The notes beneath the pieces were generated by a model, which saw nothing but the letters and a program-made list of their open reading frames with translations, made no database searches and was not told where the DNA came from. Both the position numbers and the translations under genes were made by a program. DNA of 64,000 nt from Trichoplax adhaerens (taxonomy: Eukaryota; Animalia; Placozoa). This document shows positions 47,191 through 56,280 of the stretch, piece after piece. Where the stretch lies: the NCBI RefSeq assembly GCF_000150275.1, contig NW_002060943.1, positions 4,794,008 to 4,858,007 on the forward strand, written 5' to 3'. How positions within the stretch are numbered: position 1 is the first letter of the stretch; every line of letters begins with the position of its first letter.

Positions 47191-49472
47191 ATGGCTTATA
47201 GAATTGGTTATTGCAGCTTGGCCGCAACCAAGCGTTTTCTGCAGACAAAGTCTTCTGTACAACATGTTCGATACTTTACCATCTCGCATATGAGATGGAA
47301 CGATATGCCTTTAAATCAGTCAATGAACGTTTTCGATCGTTCGACAAAGTTAGCTCAGCGAGATCGAGCTGCAAAGGCAATCAATTTTTCGGATTACGAT
47401 TATCTTCGAGAGGAGGTTGGTGAAATGACAATTTTCTTTCTCAGATTTTTTTTTCTCATACTAGACCTCTGAGTGCATGTGTAGCATGCGACCATACGAC
47501 AAATTTTAATTGTAAAGTGTTACTAGCCCTCCTTAACGATGCATCTTCTGACTAATTATAATAGTGTAGTACTGTGTATTTTTATATACGATAGAATAGT
47601 TGTTATACTAGCGTACTGTTAAATGTAACTTCTTTACTCTATTATTAAGGTTGCCGATCGCATCGCTGATAGGAGCTTTGATATTAAAAGGTAACTTCTG
47701 AAATACACATATTGCCTTTCAAGCATTTTGACAAAATATGCAAAGCCTTAGTCTTTACTATATGTCCGCGTATTAACAACATTCATGTTAAATTGTCAAA
47801 CTTGATTGGGAATTTCTCTTAAAATTCTCTGACTATATCGTCGGTCATTAGATAGATCGCTGCCACAGAAAATTTGATGTACTGTGCAGTGTATAGGCAC
47901 GACATAAAACTGTATTAGATACATCTAAGTTAGGATAGTGTTTTGGTTTATTTTTTAAGTAAAGCTAGTATTAAATGGATGCTTTGATAAATTTGTCAAC
48001 TCTTTCTTTTTCAATGGAATTCCTAGATTCTTTCCAGTGGCTGTCGATCTAGGATGTGGAAGGGGCTATATTGGCAAGTATCTTGACAAGGTATTTAAAA
48101 CCTGGCTATTCCATGAACTTGTTGCTAATCAAATAGCTTATTGATAAATGCAAACTTGTTATACTAGGAAGTAATAGGAACCTTAGTACAATGTGATCAT
48201 TCCAAGGAATCCTTAAAGATCGCACAAATGCGAGCTGCATCTTTTGAGGTTCCAGCTATCTCAGTTATCGCCGATGAGGAATTCATTCCTTTCCCCGACC
48301 ATTCTGTAGATCTATTATTTAGTAGCTTAAGTTTACATTGGGTGAATGATCTACCCGGAACTTTTGCCCAGGCAAGTGAAATATCATAGCTTATCGTCTT
48401 CCTTGCAGCGAATTTTCAAAGGCACTTTACTATTTTGGGATAAGCATCGTAGTAAAGTACATTATAATTGATGTGTAATAATTTGAGTTCCTGCAATTAC
48501 TTGTATTTAGATTTTGGCATGCTTAAAGAATGATGGTGCCTTTATTGGAGCAATGTTTGGCGGCGATACTCTTTATGAACTACGCTGTTCTTTGCAATTG
48601 GCAGAGATCGAACGTAAAGGAGGCTTCGCTCCTCGCGTTTCGCCTTTTGCAGACGTGAGAGATGTAGGCAATTTACTAACACGTGCAGGGTATACTCTTA
48701 CAACAATTGACCTGGATGATATTATAGTCAATTATCCATCAATGTTCGAACTACTCGATGACTTGAAAGGTATTCAACGTCCTCATGTATACTTTTAGTT
48801 AATTAACCTTAACACAATTATTTTGATTTGGCTCCTTAGAGCTCTCTTATGATCAATCAATTTTAAGAGAGTCAAGCTGCAGCCATAAACTGAAAAACTT
48901 TCTCTTTTACACTGCCAATGCTTTTTATTGTAGCTAAGGTAGCATGCCCGTGGAAAGGACAATTACTTTGTTTAGCTCAGTTGCAGTATAATATTTTGCT
49001 TCCTTATTACACTGCAGTATACTGACTATCATTACTCTTAACCGATGGCCTATGAGCACAGTACATGAGCACATATATGTGCGGTTGCATTCTATAGTCG
49101 CATCTCAACAAAAATTTCATTTTATGCTTGTAACAGGTATGGGTGAAAGTAATGCCGCCTGGTCTAGAACAAACATCCTTCATCGAGATACAATGATGGC
49201 GGCTGCATCCATTTACAAAGCAATGTACGGAAATGATGACGGTTCGGTACCGGCCACTTTTCGAGTCATTTCATGGATTGCTTGGAAACCCGATAAGTCT
49301 CAGGTAACTTCATTACGAAATTGCATAGTAATAATGATAGTTAAGAGATCCTTACATATTCATTACAATTATTTCAAATCTGGTCTTATTGCAGACTCAG
49401 CCAGCTGAGCGAGGATCCGCTACAATATCAATGAAAGATTTAAGTGCTTCAGATTCGAGGAAAGGCAGTTAG
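47191..49472 (+). CDS. NDUFAF5: NADH dehydrogenase complex I assembly factor 5 (SAM-dependent arginine hydroxylase), 7 exons
   Basis: Exons 47191-47415, 47650-47690, 48027-48090, 48168-48371, 48511-48769, 49137-49303, 49395-49472. Basic mitochondrial-type leader; [16 protein letters not shown]; YDYLREEV; DLGCGRG; DEEFIPF; [13 protein letters not shown]; [16 protein letters not shown]; GMGESNA; VPATF; ERGSAT. Confidence 0.96.
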
Positions 49473-50242
49473 GCTTATCATTGTTTATTAACTATCATTT
49501 GCATCTCAAACAAATATTTACTAAATCTGCTACTGCGCTAAGCCAGTAACAGCAATAGGCTTATTTTCTTTGCAATGCTTAAAGTCTAATTCCTGGATAA
49601 TCCGCTAAGACTGTGCTTACGGATTTGCTACAAAATTTCAGACAATATTCTTGATGTGATTGATATTGCTGCAAAATAATGATTTGTATAAATATTTATT
49701 TGTATAGTAGACTTTTATCAAGTTTAAAAGGGATTTTAATAAGCTGTAATGTACTTTTGAGACAATTAAGTTATTTGTTGATCATCCTTATTTACGAGAT
49801 AGTTTGATTCCGATTACTGCCATGTGAATGTAATCTCCCTGGCAATTCCCGTTCTTATTAAAATAAAGTAAATATGCGATTACTGATATAGTCTTTATCA
49901 ATATTTAAAATTTTCGTAACATTTTGTCACGGACTACTCTCCTGACAAGGGATGAAGTAAAGTATTCTGTTCCTCTAAGTTGCTACTGTCAACCACTATT
50001 TTACTTTCCGCCTAGAACTTCCCTTCTAGACTGTAGTTACACAGATAAATTTCATAACGTCGAGCTACTTTTACTTTATTTCAACTAATTCGAACAACGT
50101 AATGTACTCGTAAAAGACTACAGAAATCATCTACTAACGAACAATATTTGTAGTCACAAGTTAAATCATAAAAGTTTAGTCGACCCAACTTATATTGGTA
50201 GAAATCTATCAAGACACAAATACTTAATTTCTACTGTATCAT

Positions 50243-52108
50243 TCATGGTGTAGTTGTACCGTGACACATTTCAATAACTAGTAAACGACAATATCTCCAA
50301 CTAGCTATTTTTGACGGAGATTCTAGTTGGTAAATCACATATCCATCATTTTGGACGCTATATTCCGTATAAGCATCGAATAACCCATCTAAAGCCAGAA
50401 ATATGTATAGCTAGTAAAATTTTACTAACAAAACGAGAAAGAAAACTCCCGTATTTTGGTGCCTTATATTCGCTTACCTTTAGTTGCTCCAGGTTTATAT
50501 GACGATCTTAATCGATAAATAGATTTTTGGTATAGCTTTTTTGACGAATCTGCAGACATAGATTTTCGAAAATCTAACACATTCGTTTTTAATGCCCCAT
50601 GCAACGTTATCTATAAGACAAGAGAATATAGATATTTACTTTGGCCATTCGATCAATAAATGACAACTATATTATGGTACCGTGTATGGGCTTTTAACCC
50701 TATGCATGAACTACTAAAAATTTAGTAATCCGTGCCCTATACTAACCACAATCAACATTTAAATTAGTAAAACACATAGCTCTATATTACATACTATCAC
50801 TGTATTCTGCATTCCCAAATACATTACTACCGTAATTAGCTGATATTATTACACATGGTACAGCAAATTAATCAAAATGCATTATATAAATGGTTTGCAA
50901 AAAACTTTACTGTGCATTGATATAACTACGCTACGATAGCCATTACTCCAGTATAAAATATTATCACACCTGACTTATACATAGTATTTCTAAATCTTTT
51001 TTCACTATATTCTTTACACAACGTTTCTGTCCGTTTTCAATTAGACGTAGTTTTAAAACTTTTCTGGACCTACACATAGAGTACGCTATCATTAAATACT
51101 TTAGTGTCTAAAATTATAAGAGTAAATACAGCTTGATATTGCTGGCAATGAAAAGTAAAACATTTGCTGTTGACTTTATAAATACTTTATCCTATGTCTA
51201 ACATGTAACTGATATCCTTATCTGTATTATCTTTCGATATGCTAATTATTAGATAGAGCTCTCGGCCCATTGAGTTGATCAGTTTACCGTCAACTAGAAG
51301 AGAATTTAGTTAAAATTCGGTATATGATTAAACAGATATGCTATGAAGGACTGTATTAAATAAACGCAGTAAGCATACTCCGTGTATACATTTTACGTAT
51401 GATTTAGTTTTTATTAGGCTATACAGAAGTAAGGAACACATCATTTTGATAGTAGACGGGTGCTACTTGCCATATTTATGTGAAGATGCTTAATTCACAG
51501 TTACGGATATGATAACTTTAATTTTATTTTTTTAATTATATAAGGCAGACGAAATTATTTTGCGTTAGTAACTTAGCTGTGCTACAACTACCCTTGTGAT
51601 ACAGAAGTAAATAAAATGACTATATTAATTTTAGGATATCTATATGGCTACTTTCTTAGCAAGCTTGAACTTTTATCCTCGGAATCATCATAAGTCTGAT
51701 GCAAGTAATGTATATACACCAAGTAGTATCACGCATAGCCTAAATTTAATGCCAGCTGGCTAAGTTATATATCCTATTGATCAACATAAACAAATTTCCT
51801 GCTCCACAAATATATTTCGATCGTAAAATTACTATTGATATTGAACTATCAAAGTAAGAGTTGAAAGTAAGCGATCTTTCAAACTCAGATACTATATTTT
51901 AACTACCAATTTGAGACATACAGTTAGCATGCTATATTGCTATGGAAATCACCTTACTTGTAGCGTATGTTTACTAGTGAGGTGTTTCAACATTATAATA
52001 ATTAATGAAAAAAATTTTATGACTATGACAAGCAATAAGTAATCTCCTTTTACTTCACAACTTACCTGTAGCACTGGCACATGTGACACGCTTGATTAAT
52101 ATTTTCAT
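50243..52108 (-). CDS. Divergent D-aminoacyl-tRNA deacylase (DTD1-like) paralog, ~170 aa, active-site motifs altered; may be non-catalytic, neofunctionalised or decaying
   Basis: Five exons (52108-52066, ~51294-51203, ~51069-50970, ~50610-50478, 50388-50243), all GT-AG with no stops or indels against the neighbour. Translation: MKILIKRVTCASAT VDGKLINSMGRELYLIISISKDNTDKDISYM SRKVLKLRLIENGQKRCVKNIVKKDLEILCISQ ITLHGALKTNVLDFRKSM... DGLFDAYTEYSVQNDGYVIYQLESP... Confidence 0.85.
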
Positions 52109-53889
52109 TCTTTTGTGCCGTTTATGTATAACTTAAATACTTTCTAAGACATTTTAAAAGTTATGTGCAGTACGGTTATGCTATTAAATCGTATTGAAAG
52201 ATGGCGTTAACGAATTTATTCCAAAGTTGATAAATAAATTTGTCGTTAATGGAAGCGATTAAAGTAACATTAAAGCAATGTGAGATACTACCTATAACAG
52301 TGAACTTTAGGCAAAAATATACGATGAAAATGATACCTCAGAGGGGAAATTAGTTGCCTGAGTGATACTTGTGAATATGTAGAAAGTTTAAACGATTCTA
52401 ATTTCCGTCCTCAACATTATTAATATGGACTTCGATCACTAAATCTGATTGAAGTCTGCTAGTGAGCAAAATAAAGCATGCAGTAATGCAATTGAATAAT
52501 ATAAGGCACAGGTCTCCTGACTTCCAAGATCGACATAACACAATGGGGGTAAAAATCCTATCTTATTGAGTATGGCTGACAGTATATCGAATTATTACGA
52601 TTAAGCATACTTTACTATTTACTATTATTGCATGCAAGTCCTAGCTTTCCTCATGGATTTTATAAACTTTTTAAATAATGACGAAATTATTCATAGGGAC
52701 ATGCCATATCTTTGTATCGCTAACAGACTTGTTCTACTCGTACTAATAAGATGCGTTATACACCAACACAATGAATATTACAGTTGGTATTTAAGCTTCA
52801 ATGCTCGAAGTATTATGCCATTTAATAGACCGTCAGCCAATTGGCAATACTGTAGCATAATACGGTATGTGCTTAATTAATTTTAAATTAGCTTTTTGGG
52901 GAACTCTTTTGCGATTAACTACTTTCAAGCAATTAGTTTACAGTCAAAACTTGAAAACTACTATTACACTGCAGTGCCAATACTTTACTGAGGTGAAAAG
53001 GTAACATGCCTGTAGAAGAGCAAATAATTTATTAATTATTTAGACAATTACAATGTTGATATAATGCCTTACTATCTGTAGAGGACGTTATTACATCGTT
53101 ATGCTGCCTCATCTGGAACATCGTTGATTGCGATACAATGTTAACACTGTTATATAGAAATGGTGATGATTTAACTCCAGCTACATTACTAATTGACTTA
53201 TTTTTTGGAATCCTTAGAAATCCGACAAATCTTAGATAGCCAATTTGAAATTACTAGTTAATGATGTGGTTAGAAAATTTTAAGTATTTGTCATATATAA
53301 TTATTTGCTGCAGTCTTAAATAGCTGAACAAGGATCAGTGTAGTAAAATCAAAAAACTACTTGCGCTTTTGTAGTTTAGGGAAAAAATACGTAGACTAGT
53401 TAGATTACTTAAAAAATTAACTTCCTTTATTACTACTATGCTAGTAATCATTATTTATTTGCTGCGCTGTTGATATTTAGGTGTTTCAATTTCATTGATA
53501 AATCTAGGTAGTTCTAAGTTCATATACAGCTTTTCTTATTAACTGAATGATTTTAAATGTTTACAGTATAGTAGCAACACTATAATTATAGGGATACACG
53601 TTTATTTATTTAAATCGCTATGTTTGTTGTTACAAATTGAATTATATATTACAAAAATTATTAAAGATGATTCAAGATATTCTTGCACGCGGATAAGATT
53701 GGTACTGATTATTCTCATTTAAAAAGATAATTAGGCTACGGTGGTTGTCGTGCGTGAATATACGTCCATATAGATGATGTCTTATCTAGACAGCCTTAAA
53801 TTCCTAGTAATTATCTTGCCCTTAAAACAATATACATGTAAAATTCACATGCGCAAGATCATTCACGTACGGCAACAGACAACTAAGAC

Positions 53890-55517
53890 CTACTTAGCGG
53901 TCTGAGGAGATTCTAGTTGGTATGTTACAGGTCCATCATTGCGGATATCAATTTGCATATAAGCACCGAATAATCCATCTAAGTCAGGAGTAAACGATTT
54001 CAATATTTTTAATATTTTAGTAATATGCGCGAAGCATGTTTCATATATTCAATATTTTATAATGCAGTCAGTACCACATCCACCGACCTTTAATTGCTTC
54101 AGGTTTATAGGAAGATCTCAGCTGCGATAAGAATTTTTCATAGAGCTGTTTCGATGAATCTGCAGCCATAGCGTTATGGAAATCTAGCTTATTTCCTTTT
54201 AATACACTATACAATGTGAACTAGCAAAAACAATAAATGGAATTTTTGTTTCTCAGAAGATCGATTACCGGTCGATGTAGTTCGTATTTTCTGTGTATGT
54301 TGCATTATTACTTATTAGCATTGCGAATATGTTGAAACTATCTATTCGGTCGGAGCTCTATCACTAAATGATAATTATTAGTAGACCATGCATGAGCTAA
54401 GCCCTAGAGGCCCATTCAATTCCAGTAAAAGTACAGTACGATAAGTGTATCCAACTAGCATTAAATACCTGCTATGCTAACGAGTTTAGCTCATCATAAT
54501 AGGATTGCAGTTTCCATTTCTAGAATGCCTATCACATACTTGACTGAGTTTATTGTCGTATCACTCACTGAGTCTACTTTCGTATAACTAGTGTCACGAA
54601 CAGGCACTACACATTGGCAGCCACTGCCATTTTGCTAATTACGCTGTACTGTATATATATCACTAATCTATATATTGTCATTACCTGGCTAACACATAAT
54701 ATTTCTAAATTTTTTTCCATGACATTCTTTGTCCAACGTTTCTCTCCATCTTCAAATAATCTTAGGCTTAAAACCTTCCTAGAACTGCATATACAAATTA
54801 TTTCAATCTATTCCTTTTCATACATTTTAAAACAAGAGACTGATTTAATATTAAGAGTACACCCTATTCACTTTAGGTAATCATAAGGAGAAATGATTAG
54901 ATTATTAAGAGATTTTATCTGACGTCTAACATGTAATCAAGATCTTTATCTGTGTCATATCTTGATATGCCAATCAATATACAGAGTCCTCTACCGATTG
55001 AGCTGATTAATTCACCATCAACTAGAATAGCATTATGTTTGAAATACATGAGATTAGTTACGTTAAGGCAAGCATTCATTCACTACGCAGTCTAACTACA
55101 GTACTACTTGATAAAAGCGTCACTGTACTCGGTCGTTTTTAAATGCATGCTATGATACAGCGTCTTTAATTTCGTTTTAGATACATTCACAGGGGGAAAT
55201 TATAACTAAAACTAACGTGCAAATACAGTAGTTTATACCGATATCTACTAAAATATCTGATACGGAAATAATATTGCTGTAGTTTACTATCACAGAAGAA
55301 ATTTAATAGCAAGCTATCGATGGAATCATTCCACCTTGAAATTGCAGAAACATATAGTCCTCTATACTGTAGTAACTGTACTGTACTGTAGACTACCTTA
55401 CAGTACATCTAGGTAGTCATTTACTTCTTTAGCAGTCGTCTACCGCATATCATCTCCAACACCTAACAACTAACCTGTCACACTAGCAGCTGTAACACGC
55501 TGGATTAAAGCTTTCAT
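53890..55517 (-). CDS. DTD1: D-aminoacyl-tRNA deacylase 1, ~151 aa, 5 exons
   Basis: Exons 55517-55475, ~55022-54931, ~54784-54685, ~54220-54088, 53978-53890. Translation: MKALIQRVTAASVT VDGELISSIGRGLCILIGIS... LRLFEDGEKRW... LCVSQFTL..LKGNKLDFH.AM... DGLFGAYMQIDIRNDGPVTYQLES. The canonical SQFTL and NDGPVT motifs are present. Confidence 0.95.
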
Positions 55518-55789
55518 GTCTTTCTACTAACTGTTCATATAAATAATAATTTTGAATTCGTTTTATTCAGGTCAGTCTGCCTTGCTTCTAAGTGTACTGT
55601 ATAGAATTGAGGGCTTATAGCATGCAAAATATGATTCGCCAGGTTTCATCAATAGTTATGGAGATGGTTATTGCACTACTAAGACATGGAGGTGTCTCAT
55701 ACAAACGTCCATTATTTACAGTTAAAGCTAAGCCAGAGCACAATGTCGCATACGCCAGCATTAGCCGACAATACTGTCGACCACGAATG

Positions 55790-56280
55790 ACTGTTATAGT
55801 GTACAGTGTACAGTACAGTATATTGTACATCGCACTGTACTGTACACTTGGGATTCTACCGTACTGTACAGTACAGTACTGTACTCAGTGGACATACAGT
55901 ACAGTACAGTACAGTACATACTGTAGATGCTTCTCCCAAAGAGACTCTAGTACAGTACTGTACTAAAACTACTGGAACCTTTCGTCCTGGAGGACTACAC
56001 TGCCAATTTCGAACAAGATAACTCTTCAAAGACGAACGCTAACGCCAAGATAGCTACTGGCGTCACTATAATAATGAAGCCAACATCGCTCTTTCTTCGA
56101 TGGAAATATTCTCTCTGCGGTATACTGTTCGTTGTATGACTGCAGTCGAACTTAGTAACAAGTGGCCACAGTAGCAGCTGCATCAACAAGTAACACACAA
56201 GAGTCATGTTGTATCGTACTACTGTACAGTCTACAGTACTGTGCTGCATGGCGCGTACTGTACAGTACAGTACGGTCAAG
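55790..56280. repeat. TACAG/CTGTA palindromic arrays in the DTD1/CFAP70 divergent promoter region
   Basis: gtacagtgtacagtacagta..., gtactgtacagtacagtactgtac, acagtacagtacagtacagtac, and a patch at 56215-56275. A further patch lies in DTD1 intron 1 (~55365-55407). Confidence 0.85.

What the first reader, a model, noticed from the sequence alone, without database searches (positions are those of the whole stretch)
50243..55517. Tandem DTD1 duplicate that is intact but has lost the Gly-cisPro chiral-proofreading motif
Seen in sequence: two five-exon DTD genes lie in tandem on the minus strand, and neither is in the ORF track. They are colinear, with no indels over 147 aligned residues and 91 identities by my hand count (~62%). 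All splice sites are preserved and many third positions differ. The upstream copy is canonical. The downstream copy changes the family-invariant positions: NDGPVT->NDGYVI (CCT->TAT at 50341-50339), SQFTL->SQITL, IQRV->IKRV, FGAYM->FDAYT, GLC->ELY, LRLF->LRLI, RW->RC. It also gains basic residues and a 23-aa tail. Established: DTD is a dimer in which the Gly-cisPro of one subunit inserts into the other subunit's site and rejects L-amino acids, and catalysis is largely tRNA-assisted. Inference: an open frame at this divergence suggests selection. The copy could be a deacylase with altered stereospecificity, a non-catalytic RNA binder, or a heterodimerising tuner of DTD1 (for example limiting Gly-tRNA(Gly) misediting).
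Basis: partly seen in the sequence, partly recalled or inferred. Interest (0 to 1): 0.85.

Follow-up and report, generated by a model that had tools for sequence, protein, structure and literature searches.

The report
Trichoplax DTD1 duplicates lacking proofreading proline
Next to its normal D-aminoacyl-tRNA deacylase gene, Trichoplax adhaerens has a duplicate that lost the proline the enzyme needs; a third copy 110 kb away shares the loss and looks kept by selection, but the duplicate in this window looks weakly constrained, unexpressed and probably decaying.

Summary
Two five-exon DTD1 genes lie in tandem on the minus strand, with identical exon lengths, GT-AG introns and 91/147 identical residues. 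Copy A is canonical DTD1 (TRIADDRAFT_19862), and all four of its introns are spliced in RNA contigs. Copy B (TRIADDRAFT_51789) reads SQITL/NDGYVI.

Copy C (TRIADDRAFT_51776, 110 kb away) shares P139Y, T141I, F79I and W62C with B, so the proline was lost before B and C split. P139, T141, F79 and W62 are invariant in 118 animal DTD1s, and proline-to-alanine abolishes activity in two DTDs.

C is under purifying selection (omega 0.16-0.32; omega=1 rejected). B and C have no indels in 441 nt, against about 12 expected from their introns. B itself is the degenerate member:
- omega is 0.57 or higher and cannot be told from 1.
- It has eight further changes at positions conserved in at least 90% of DTD1s.
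- Its "23-aa tail" comes from a 1-nt deletion, and the frame runs into a dispersed repeat.
- No spliced RNA was seen in four runs.

Verdict: a real, undescribed Gly-Tyr DTD paralogue lineage, with B probably relaxed or decaying. Function is untested.

The parts
53890..55517 (-). Copy A: canonical DTD1 (TRIADDRAFT_19862 / B3RKW5), 151 aa, SQFTL + NDGPVT. Exons 55517-55475, 55021-54931, 54784-54685, 54220-54088, 53978-53890. The 3' UTR reaches about 53013-53123.
   Evidence: Model. It is identical to P0007. Spliced joints 53978/54088, 54220/54685, 54784/54931 and 55021/55475 are in RNA contigs. Pfam PF02580 scores 178.7 bits.
50243..52108 (-). Copy B: the Gly-Tyr DTD1 paralogue (TRIADDRAFT_51789 / B3RKW4), 170-aa open five-exon frame. 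Exons 52108-52066, 51293-51203, 51069-50970, 50610-50478, 50388-50243.
   Evidence: Model. The database models P0005 and P0001 cover exons 1, 3, 4 and 5. PF02580 scores 67.8 bits on those models. No spliced joint was seen in four runs.
50339..50341 (-). TAT codon (Tyr139) in place of the invariant cis-proline of NxGPVT. The following Thr141 is Ile.
   Evidence: Pro and Thr are 118/118 in other animal DTD1s.
50602..50610 (-). ITL at the start of exon 4. With the SQ that ends exon 3 this gives SQITL in place of SQFTL. A relative's contig has 50606 G>A, which changes this Thr to Met.
50308..50312 (-). Run of five A. One A fewer than implied by the H2 orthologue (which ends ...SKNS*) and by paralogue C (which ends ...SKSS*). 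This shifts the frame two codons before the ancestral stop, which would be at 50303-50301.
   Evidence: P0001 ends ESPSKNS. C ends ESPSKSS.
50243..50307 (-). Read-through tail of 21 residues plus stop. It is translated from former 3' flank and, from about 50269 down, from a dispersed repeat.
49924..50269 (.). Dispersed repeat of about 345 bp, with at least 30 copies in the genome at 72-93% identity. It abuts B about 32 nt past the ancestral stop.
   Evidence: An expressed paralogous copy matches 50102-50266 at 93%.
55800..56000 (.). Dense TACAG/CTGTA array upstream of A: 16 per 200 nt against a window mean of 0.86. It is absent upstream of B (52109-53000) and of C.
   Evidence: The idea that such arrays mark promoters comes from an earlier unchecked note.

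Best explanation
B is a real, placozoan-specific tandem duplicate of DTD1. It is one of two members (with copy C, 110 kb away on the same scaffold) of a Gly-Tyr branch.

The common ancestor of that branch had already replaced the cross-subunit cis-proline and part of its cradle: P139Y, T141I, I132Y, V76I, F79I and W62C. Proline-to-alanine alone abolishes deacylation in the P. falciparum and E. coli enzymes. The Gly-Tyr proteins therefore very probably no longer perform canonical D-aminoacyl-tRNA deacylation (inferred).

The branch was nevertheless kept by selection after the change, as shown for C and by the absence of indels. The ancestral Gly-Tyr protein therefore did something. Most plausibly it is a DTD-fold dimer with altered or lost editing specificity, as a homodimer or paired with DTD1 (inferred).

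B is the degenerate member:
- weak or absent constraint on its protein sequence;
- further hits at invariant residues;
- a terminal frameshift in this genome;
- a repeat at its 3' end;
- no spliced RNA detected.

B is most likely a redundant copy that is silent or nearly so and is sliding into pseudogene status.
For: Family size. A Pfam PF02580 scan of the whole genome finds four loci. C and D were modelled with the same 43/91/100/133 exon plan.

Shared loss. C reads SQITL/NDGYVI. B and C share 28 derived residues. P139, T141, F79, W62, G32 and V13 are 118/118 in other animal DTD1s.

Tree. The topology is (A,(B,C)) with aLRT 99. Branch lengths are 0.9 for the BC stem, 0.67 for B, 0.23 for C and 0.007 for A.

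Selection:
- B-C dN/dS is 0.35 with dS 0.38.
- Omega for C is 0.16-0.32, and omega=1 is rejected. Omega for B is 0.57 (CI 0.30-1.07) under a clock and unbounded without one; omega=1 is not rejected.
- Polarised counts are 8 synonymous and 24 nonsynonymous on B, against 19 and 12 on C.
- No gene-conversion tracts were found.
- Introns 2 and 4 of B and C are 73-77% identical with 6 gap events in 218 nt. That predicts about 12 indels in 441 nt on the B-C path; none is seen.

B-only decay. B alone has G26E, C28Y, D37N, F55I, G127D, M130T, Q6K and I23M at positions conserved in at least 90% of DTD1s. Its exons give the lowest Pfam scores of the four genes.

Tail. It is a frameshift relative to the H2 orthologue and to C, and it ends in a repeat.

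RNA. A is spliced in X6, X8 and X16. B shows only unspliced pieces, in X16 and X4.

Literature. PfDTD P150A and EcDTD P138A are inactive, and Met141 and Ile143 form the base that holds the cis-proline (PMC3845328).

Fold. C folds confidently as a DTD domain, pLDDT 91.7, and matches human DTD1 at E=5e-42.
Against: - B keeps an open frame across five exons, with all eight splice sites intact and no indel in 441 nt. Under full neutrality since the B-C split that is unlikely: P(no indel) is 0.002-0.05, P(no stop) about 0.2 and P(splice sites intact) about 0.07.
- Under a synonymous clock, omega=1 for B is nearly rejected (p=0.069).
- B differs from its H2 orthologue at only 2 of about 117 comparable residues. 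That is fewer than neutral expectation if the local dS equals the genome mean of 0.024 (PMC6057997).
- Absence from Logan contigs of four runs is not absence of expression. A rare cell type or life stage would be missed.
- The frameshift alters only the last two residues. It could be tolerated, or it could be an assembly error.
Confidence: 0.55

Rival explanations
1. B is a functional, neofunctionalised protein expressed in a rare cell type or life stage. It could be a deacylase with altered stereo- or substrate specificity, a non-catalytic binder of tRNA 3' ends, or a heterodimer partner that disables or retunes one of the two cross-subunit sites of DTD1. Its high omega would then reflect adaptive change rather than decay.
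For: - B has an open frame, intact splice sites and no indels, against 3-6 indels expected if neutral.
- Without a clock, omega for B exceeds 1, with only 8 synonymous changes on its branch.
- Net charge shifts to +12, against +1 in A and +5 in C.
- The sister copy C shows that a Gly-Tyr protein can be maintained by selection.
- The A+C heterodimer model scores ipSAE 0.72 against a best control of 0.00. The three runs share at least 94% of contacts and partner pLDDT is at least 85. That mark was reached by 51 of 78 solved complexes and 2 of 108 mismatched pairs.
- An unspliced RNA-library contig over B has a depth similar to A's contigs in X16.
Against: - No spliced B joint was found in four runs, while A is spliced at depths up to 183.
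- Omega=1 is not rejected for B.
- B's private changes hit fold-conserved residues such as G26, C28, D37, G127 and M130. They do not cluster at the predicted interface (2 of 18).
- Many are G-to-A changes toward AT-rich codons, as mutation pressure alone would give.
- The terminal frameshift runs into a repeat.
- No TACAG array lies upstream.
- The complex test used C, not B. It can pass from memory of solved DTD dimers, and close relatives of a true partner usually pass.
Confidence: 0.27
2. The whole Gly-Tyr branch (B and C) is functionless. Loss of the proline marked the death of the duplicate, and both copies are unprocessed pseudogenes that happen still to be open.
For: - The changes hit residues that are invariant in 118 DTD1s and, for the proline, experimentally essential.
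- Neither B nor C was seen spliced. The only C-derived contig retains intron 3.
- Neither has the upstream TACAG array of A.
- C differs between H1 and H2 at conserved D91 and A128.
Against: - Omega=1 is rejected for C (p=0.006 and 0.0013).
- B-C dS is 0.38 with no indel in 441 nt on either copy, where about 12 are expected from their own introns.
- Both keep all splice sites and open frames.
- C folds with pLDDT 91.7.
- The H2 orthologue of C is also intact at 151 aa.
Confidence: 0.1
3. B is still a working D-aminoacyl-tRNA deacylase, because catalysis is RNA-assisted and the fold tolerates the substitutions.
For: - Catalysis needs no side chain.
- F89A, T90A, S87P and Q88A mutants of PfDTD are fully active (PMC3845328).
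- Arg7, Ser-Gln, Asn-Asp-Gly and Phe126 are kept in B.
Against: - P150A and G149A in PfDTD, and P138A and G137A in EcDTD, abolish activity.
- B also changes the residues that hold the proline in place: M130T, I132Y and V76I. It changes G127D next to the adenine-pocket Phe as well.
- Pro is 118/118 in animal DTD1s.
Confidence: 0.05

Closest known systems
Canonical DTD1 (D-aminoacyl-tRNA deacylase, Pfam PF02580; human DTD1 PDB 2OKV; PfDTD; EcDTD)
   Same: - Same fold family. Copy C matches 2OKV at E=5e-42 over its full length.
- B is 62% identical to the neighbouring DTD1.
- Same five-exon structure.
- Arg7, Ser-Gln, Asn-Asp-Gly and Phe126 are kept.
   Different: - The Gly-cisPro proline is Tyr.
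- Thr141 is Ile and the SQFTL Phe is Ile.
- Cradle residues are changed.
- B additionally loses G26, C28, D37, F55, G127 and M130.
- Canonical activity is expected to be lost, by analogy with the P-to-A mutants in PMC3845328.
ATD (Animalia-specific tRNA deacylase, annotated DTD2 in vertebrates)
   Same: It is a natural DTD paralogue in which the cross-subunit Gly-Pro filter was re-tooled (Gly-transPro), relaxing chiral selectivity. It sets the precedent that this motif can evolve a new editing function (PMC5802732, PMC7302879).
   Different: - ATD keeps the proline and has the PQATL and TNGPY/FTH motifs.
- ATD is less than 30% identical to DTD and dates back to choanoflagellates.
- B and C have SQITL/NDGYVI and are 62-67% identical to DTD1.
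- On the tree, B and C nest with Trichoplax DTD1.
Young unprocessed (duplicated) pseudogenes and pseudoenzyme paralogues
   Same: - Tandem duplicate with lost key residues.
- Omega near 1 on its own branch.
- Terminal frameshift and a repeat insertion at the 3' end.
- No detected mature transcript.
   Different: - No internal stop or frameshift.
- All splice sites are intact.
- The sister copy with the same motif loss is under purifying selection.

Membership tests
DTD (PF02580, D-aminoacyl-tRNA deacylase) | Sequence match to the Tyr_Deacylase profile above the gathering score (25 bits) | tested here: met
   The B database models (exons 1, 3, 4 and 5) score 67.8 bits. C scores 148.8 and A 178.7. 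Single exons of B alone fall below the cut-off, at 16-18 bits.
DTD (PF02580, D-aminoacyl-tRNA deacylase) | NxGPVT motif with the cross-subunit Gly-cisPro | tested here: not met
   B and C read NDGYVI. Pro and Thr are 118/118 in other animal DTD1s.
DTD (PF02580, D-aminoacyl-tRNA deacylase) | SQFTL motif | tested here: not met
   B and C read SQITL. Phe is 118/118. However, F89A in PfDTD and F79A in EcDTD are active.
DTD (PF02580, D-aminoacyl-tRNA deacylase) | Conserved Arg7, and the invariant Met (Pf Met141) that hold the Gly-cisPro loop | tested here: inconclusive
   Arg7 is kept in both B and C. Met130 is kept in C but is Thr in B. The residue equivalent to Ile143 is Tyr in both. Residue roles are from PMC3845328 and PMC5802732.
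DTD (PF02580, D-aminoacyl-tRNA deacylase) | Dimer with active sites built across the interface | tested here: inconclusive
   The A+C model scores ipSAE 0.72 against a best control of 0.00. The mark was reached by 51 of 78 solved complexes and 2 of 108 mismatched pairs. It was done with C, not B, and may reflect memory of solved DTD dimers.
DTD (PF02580, D-aminoacyl-tRNA deacylase) | Deacylation of D-aminoacyl-tRNA and Gly-tRNA(Ala), with rejection of L-aminoacyl-tRNA | not testable with these tools
   This needs a biochemical assay.
ATD (Animalia-specific tRNA deacylase) | PQATL and TNGPY/FTH motifs, and less than 30% identity to DTD | tested here: not met
   B and C have SQITL/NDGYVI and are 62-67% identical to Trichoplax DTD1. 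The motifs are from PMC5802732 and PMC7302879.
Pseudogene (unprocessed duplicate) | Disabling mutation (stop, frameshift or lost splice site) | tested here: inconclusive
   There are no internal stops and all splice sites are intact. There is one 1-nt frameshift two codons before the ancestral stop, relative to H2-B and to C.
Pseudogene (unprocessed duplicate) | Neutral evolution (omega near 1) on its own branch | tested here: inconclusive
   Omega=1 is not rejected for B (p=0.27 and 0.069). The absence of indels argues against neutrality for the whole branch.
Pseudogene (unprocessed duplicate) | No mature transcript | tested here: inconclusive
   No spliced joint for B was seen in contigs of four runs, while A is spliced. 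Contigs show presence, not absence.

The most novel reading that the evidence does not exclude
Placozoans maintain a second natural re-tooling of the DTD chiral filter, after ATD. This is a Gly-Tyr DTD1 paralogue lineage: C, and possibly B in a rare cell type or life stage. In it a tyrosine replaces the cis-proline. The protein would then act either as an editing enzyme with non-D specificity, or as a partner that forms asymmetric heterodimers with DTD1 and disables or retunes one of the two cross-subunit sites. This may relate to the high D-aspartate content reported for Trichoplax.
Probability: 0.25. Interest if true: 0.72.

Novelty: new variant of a known kind. Interest (0 to 1): 0.42.

Why it matters
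The Gly-cisPro motif is treated as universal and indispensable in DTD. It is invariant in the 118 animal DTD1s examined here, and proline-to-alanine kills the enzyme. Until now the only described natural departure from the DTD motif was ATD, which still keeps the proline.

A paralogue lineage that replaced the proline and its cradle, and was then kept under purifying selection (copy C), would be a natural experiment on three questions:
- what the DTD fold can do without its chiral filter;
- whether a cross-subunit active site lets a dead paralogue regulate the live enzyme;
- how proofreading factors diversify in early-branching animals.

For genome annotation, B3RKW4 and B3RKV1 should not be called D-aminoacyl-tRNA deacylases by homology alone. 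The published B models skip an apparently intact exon.

If B is merely a decaying duplicate, this locus is ordinary. The interest then shifts to copy C, which lies outside the window.

Tried and rejected
Steps not taken or blocked:
B was searched exon by exon by reference (exon 4; exons 2, 4 and 5) and through the database models P0005 and P0001. Exons were joined only inside local scripts, for translation, alignment, dN/dS and the tree.
- Structure and complex predictions used copy C (P0008) as a proxy. No full-length B exists as a database protein.
H2 DNA could therefore not be fetched, and no H1-H2 codon comparison or check of exon 2 in H2 was possible.

Searches that added little or nothing:
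- The representative search with B exon 4 found only the B cluster plus weak hits.
- Word-indexed searches with the H2 B model and with H2 copy C found only the three Trichoplax clusters. No Gly-Tyr relative was seen outside Trichoplax H1/H2, but other placozoan genomes may not be in those databases.
- Expression look-ups in supplements found nothing for these genes (Gruber-Vodicka 2019, Najle 2023 and Kamm 2018). The single-cell atlas paper PMC6040636 is not held.
- No paper in the library combines Trichoplax with DTD.

Hypotheses rejected:
- Gene conversion between A and B, as an explanation of the synonymous asymmetry. No runs of shared sites were found.
- ATD membership, on motifs and identity.

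Limits of the data:
- Enrichment of the shared B/C changes at the predicted dimer interface is not significant (10 of 28 against 36 of 147, p=0.10).
- X4 looks like low-coverage genomic DNA, with only unspliced scattered contigs. It says nothing about expression.
- The careful tree search did not finish, so the tree cited is the quick one.

Full report
**What is there.**
The genome is 105.6 Mb in 1414 contigs. The window is part of a 13.26-Mb scaffold. Database proteins identical to the translated genes identify the organism as Trichoplax adhaerens.

Two genes lie head to tail on the minus strand of 50243-55517.
- A has exons 55517-55475, 55021-54931, 54784-54685, 54220-54088 and 53978-53890, encoding 151 aa.
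- B has exons 52108-52066, 51293-51203, 51069-50970, 50610-50478 and 50388-50243, encoding 170 aa.

The first four exons of both genes are 43, 91, 100 and 133 nt. Every intron is GT..AG. The substitutions it listed are all present, including CCT->TAT at 50341-50339.

A is TRIADDRAFT_19862/B3RKW5. B is already annotated as TRIADDRAFT_51789/B3RKW4, but as a 131-aa model that skips exon 2. The Trichoplax sp. H2 orthologue of B (RDD38495.1, 126 aa) also skips exon 2.

**Expression.**
Contigs of four public runs from four studies were laid on 50100-55650.
- All four introns of A appear as exact spliced joints: 53978/54088, 54220/54685, 54784/54931 and 55021/55475. They are seen in two or three runs (X6, X8, X16), at depths up to 183.
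- No joint of B appears in any run.
- Over B there are only unspliced pieces. X16 covers 50568-50928, at a depth similar to that run's A contigs. X4 covers 50597-50873 and 51004-51375, but X4 behaves like low-coverage genomic DNA.
- An X6 piece at 50957 is really copy C with intron 3 retained.

Contigs prove presence, not absence. B is therefore "not seen spliced", not "shown silent".

**The key addition: B is not alone.**
A Pfam PF02580 scan of the whole genome finds four DTD-type loci.
- Copy C is at scaffold C1414:4733236-4735989, 110 kb from B on the same strand. It is TRIADDRAFT_51776/B3RKV1.
- Copy D is at C1399:453482-455628.
- Both have the same 43/91/100/133 exon plan and open frames.

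C is 151 aa and reads SQITL and NDGYVI like B, but keeps GRGLC, LRLF and FGAYM. D reads SQYTL/NDGPTT and is very divergent.

B and C share 109 of 147 residues and 28 derived residues relative to A. In a tree with 58 other animal DTD1s, the Trichoplax genes group as (A,(B,C)) with aLRT 99. Branch lengths are 0.9 for the BC stem, 0.67 for B, 0.23 for C and 0.007 for A (this is the quick tree, because the careful search did not finish).

The proline was therefore lost once, in a placozoan-lineage duplicate, before B and C separated.

**How unusual the changes are.**
Among 118 other animal DTD1-like proteins, V13, G26, C28, G32, D37, W62, F79, M130, P139 and T141 are 118/118.
- B and C share changes at V13, G32, W62, F79, P139 and T141. 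They also share changes at G87, K89, H93, A95, V132 and I134.
- B alone adds Q6K, I23M, G26E, C28Y, D37N, F55I, G127D and M130T.
- C alone adds only D91N, and its H2 orthologue keeps Asp at that position.

Ahmad et al. 2013 (PMC3845328) report the following:
- P150A and G149A in PfDTD, and P138A and G137A in EcDTD, abolish activity.
- The cis-proline is held by a hydrophobic base that includes Met141 and Ile143.
- F89A, T90A, S87P and Q88A mutants stay active.

By that standard the F-to-I change is probably harmless. P139Y together with I132Y, T141I and V76I (and M130T and G127D in B) very likely ends canonical chiral proofreading. This step is inference, not measurement.

**Selection.**
Nei-Gojobori estimates are as follows.

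| Pair | dS | omega |
|---|---|---|
| A-B | 0.82 | 0.29 |
| A-C | 1.28 | 0.15 |
| B-C | 0.38 | 0.35 (bootstrap 0.20-0.61) |

Polarising the B-C differences with A gives 8 synonymous and 24 nonsynonymous changes on B, against 19 and 12 on C (Fisher p=0.005). No gene-conversion tracts were found.

A three-taxon codon likelihood model gives the following.

| Model | omega C | test of omega C = 1 | omega B | test of omega B = 1 |
|---|---|---|---|---|
| No clock | 0.16 | rejected, p=0.006 | at the upper bound | not rejected, p=0.27 |
| Equal mutational time for B and C | 0.32 | rejected, p=0.0013 | 0.57 (CI about 0.30-1.07) | not rejected, p=0.069 |

Without a clock, omega B = omega C is rejected (p=0.03).

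Introns 2 and 4 of B and C are 73-77% identical, with 6 gap events in 218 aligned nt. A neutral 441-nt sequence would therefore have collected about 12 indels on the B-C path, and about 3-6 on B alone. None is seen. P(0) for B alone is 0.002-0.05. P(no stop) is about 0.2, and P(all splice dinucleotides intact) is about 0.07.

H1 and H2 orthologues differ at 0 of 151 residues in A, 3 of 151 in C and 2 of about 117 in B. The published mean dS of 0.024 (PMC6057997) would suggest omega near 0.3 for B and C. The local dS is unknown, however, and the test loses significance at half that value.

Together, the Gly-Tyr lineage was maintained by selection after losing the proline. B has evolved much more freely than C. 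It was frame-constrained for most of its history, but its recent state cannot be told from neutrality.

**The tail.**
H2-B ends ...ESPSKNS and C ends ...ESPSKSS. In this genome the run of A at 50308-50312 is one base shorter than the H2 protein implies. This moves the frame past the ancestral stop (50303-50301) to a TGA at 50245-50243.

A dispersed repeat of about 345 bp, with at least 30 copies, occupies 49924-50269. The last codons and the stop of the H1 frame therefore lie inside it.

The "23-aa tail" is thus a frameshift read-through into 3' flank and repeat, not an acquired domain. It could in principle be an assembly error. No run covered 50286-50471.

**Other indications.**
- A has a dense TACAG/CTGTA array upstream: 16 per 200 nt against a window mean of 0.86. 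B and C have none. An earlier unchecked note suggested that such arrays mark promoters.
- B's net charge is +12, against +1 for A and +5 for C. Many of B's private changes are G-to-A changes toward AT-rich codons, which mutation pressure alone could produce.
- A contig from a relative (X16) carries 50606 G>A. This turns the motif Thr of SQITL into Met.

**Structure.**
C folds confidently as a DTD domain: pLDDT 91.7 and pTM 0.86. It matches human DTD1 (2OKV) at E=5e-42.

An A+C heterodimer model scores ipSAE 0.72 against a best control of 0.00. The three runs agree in at least 94% of contacts, and partner pLDDT is at least 85. That mark was reached by 51 of 78 solved complexes and 2 of 108 mismatched pairs. 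The interface includes residues 78-81 and 129-144 of both chains, that is, both motifs.

This shows that the paralogue still looks like a DTD dimer partner, not that it binds. Solved DTD dimers exist, and close relatives of a true partner usually pass this test. It was done with C, because the joined B protein could not be submitted.

**Comparison with what is known.**
B and C are sequence members of PF02580, but they fail both signature motifs of DTD. They are not ATD. ATD keeps the proline in trans, carries PQATL and TNGPY/FTH, and is less than 30% identical to DTD (PMC5802732, PMC7302879). No paper in the library links Trichoplax with DTD.

Trichoplax contains high micromolar D-aspartate (bioRxiv 10.1101/2020.04.26.036582). 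That is context for a four-gene DTD family, not evidence.

**Verdict.**
A Gly-Tyr DTD1 paralogue lineage exists and was selected, which is a new variant of a known kind. The copy in this window is its degenerate member, most likely silent or nearly so and drifting toward pseudogene status (0.55). A live, neofunctionalised B is the main rival (0.27).
- The more promising object is copy C, which lies outside the window.

**Limits.**
- The joined B model was not sent to any search, fold or complex tool.
- Only the one read-laying run used contigs rather than raw reads.
- No other placozoan genome was reachable.

Noticed in passing
G000:C1414:4733236-4735989 (L009:5237-7990, minus strand), 60.8 kb before the window start: Copy C is a third DTD1-type gene (TRIADDRAFT_51776/B3RKV1, 151 aa) with the same five-exon plan. 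It reads SQITL/NDGYVI like B but is otherwise well conserved and under purifying selection. It is the better candidate for a functional Gly-Tyr DTD paralogue.
   Followed up: yes
G000:C1399:453482-455628 (L008:3483-5629, minus strand): Copy D is a fourth DTD-type gene (159 aa) with the same 43/91/100/133 exon plan. It reads SQYTL/NDGPTT and sits on a very long branch (3.46 substitutions per site), so its placement in the tree is unsure. Expression was not examined.
   Followed up: partly
window 54784 to 55475 (minus strand): In run X6, copy A also shows an exon-2-skipping joint from exon 1 to exon 3. Its depth is 47, against 92 for the normal exon 1 to exon 2 joint. Skipping 91 nt shifts the frame. 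Both published models of B (H1 and H2) also skip exon 2.
   Followed up: no
window 49924-50269: This is a dispersed repeat of about 345 bp, with at least 30 copies genome-wide at 72-93% identity. It may be a MITE or SINE. A paralogous copy lies inside expressed contigs of 700-2000 nt in X6 and X8.
   Followed up: partly
window 55800-56000, and 55200-55400 in intron 1 of A: A dense TACAG/CTGTA array lies upstream of DTD1 (16 per 200 nt against a window mean of 0.86), with a smaller cluster in intron 1. There are none upstream of B or C.
   Followed up: partly
window 50568 and 50606; 54723: The relative sampled in run X16 differs from the H2 reference proteins. It has T80M in B's SQITL motif and V66I in A. 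Its B contig diverges from the genome at 50568, inside exon 4, with a 10-nt loose end. This may be an allele, another strain, or a contig-end artefact.
   Followed up: no
window 52215-52430: Short contigs from X8 (an RNA run with spliced A) and from X4 lie 110-320 nt upstream of B's ATG. They are not joined to exon 1. They could be read-through from A, an upstream start of B, or DNA carry-over.
   Followed up: no
window 47191-49408 (plus strand): Exon-like ORFs of a plus-strand gene converge on B's 3' end. From memory the translations look methyltransferase-like (NDUFAF5-type). This was not tested.
   Followed up: no
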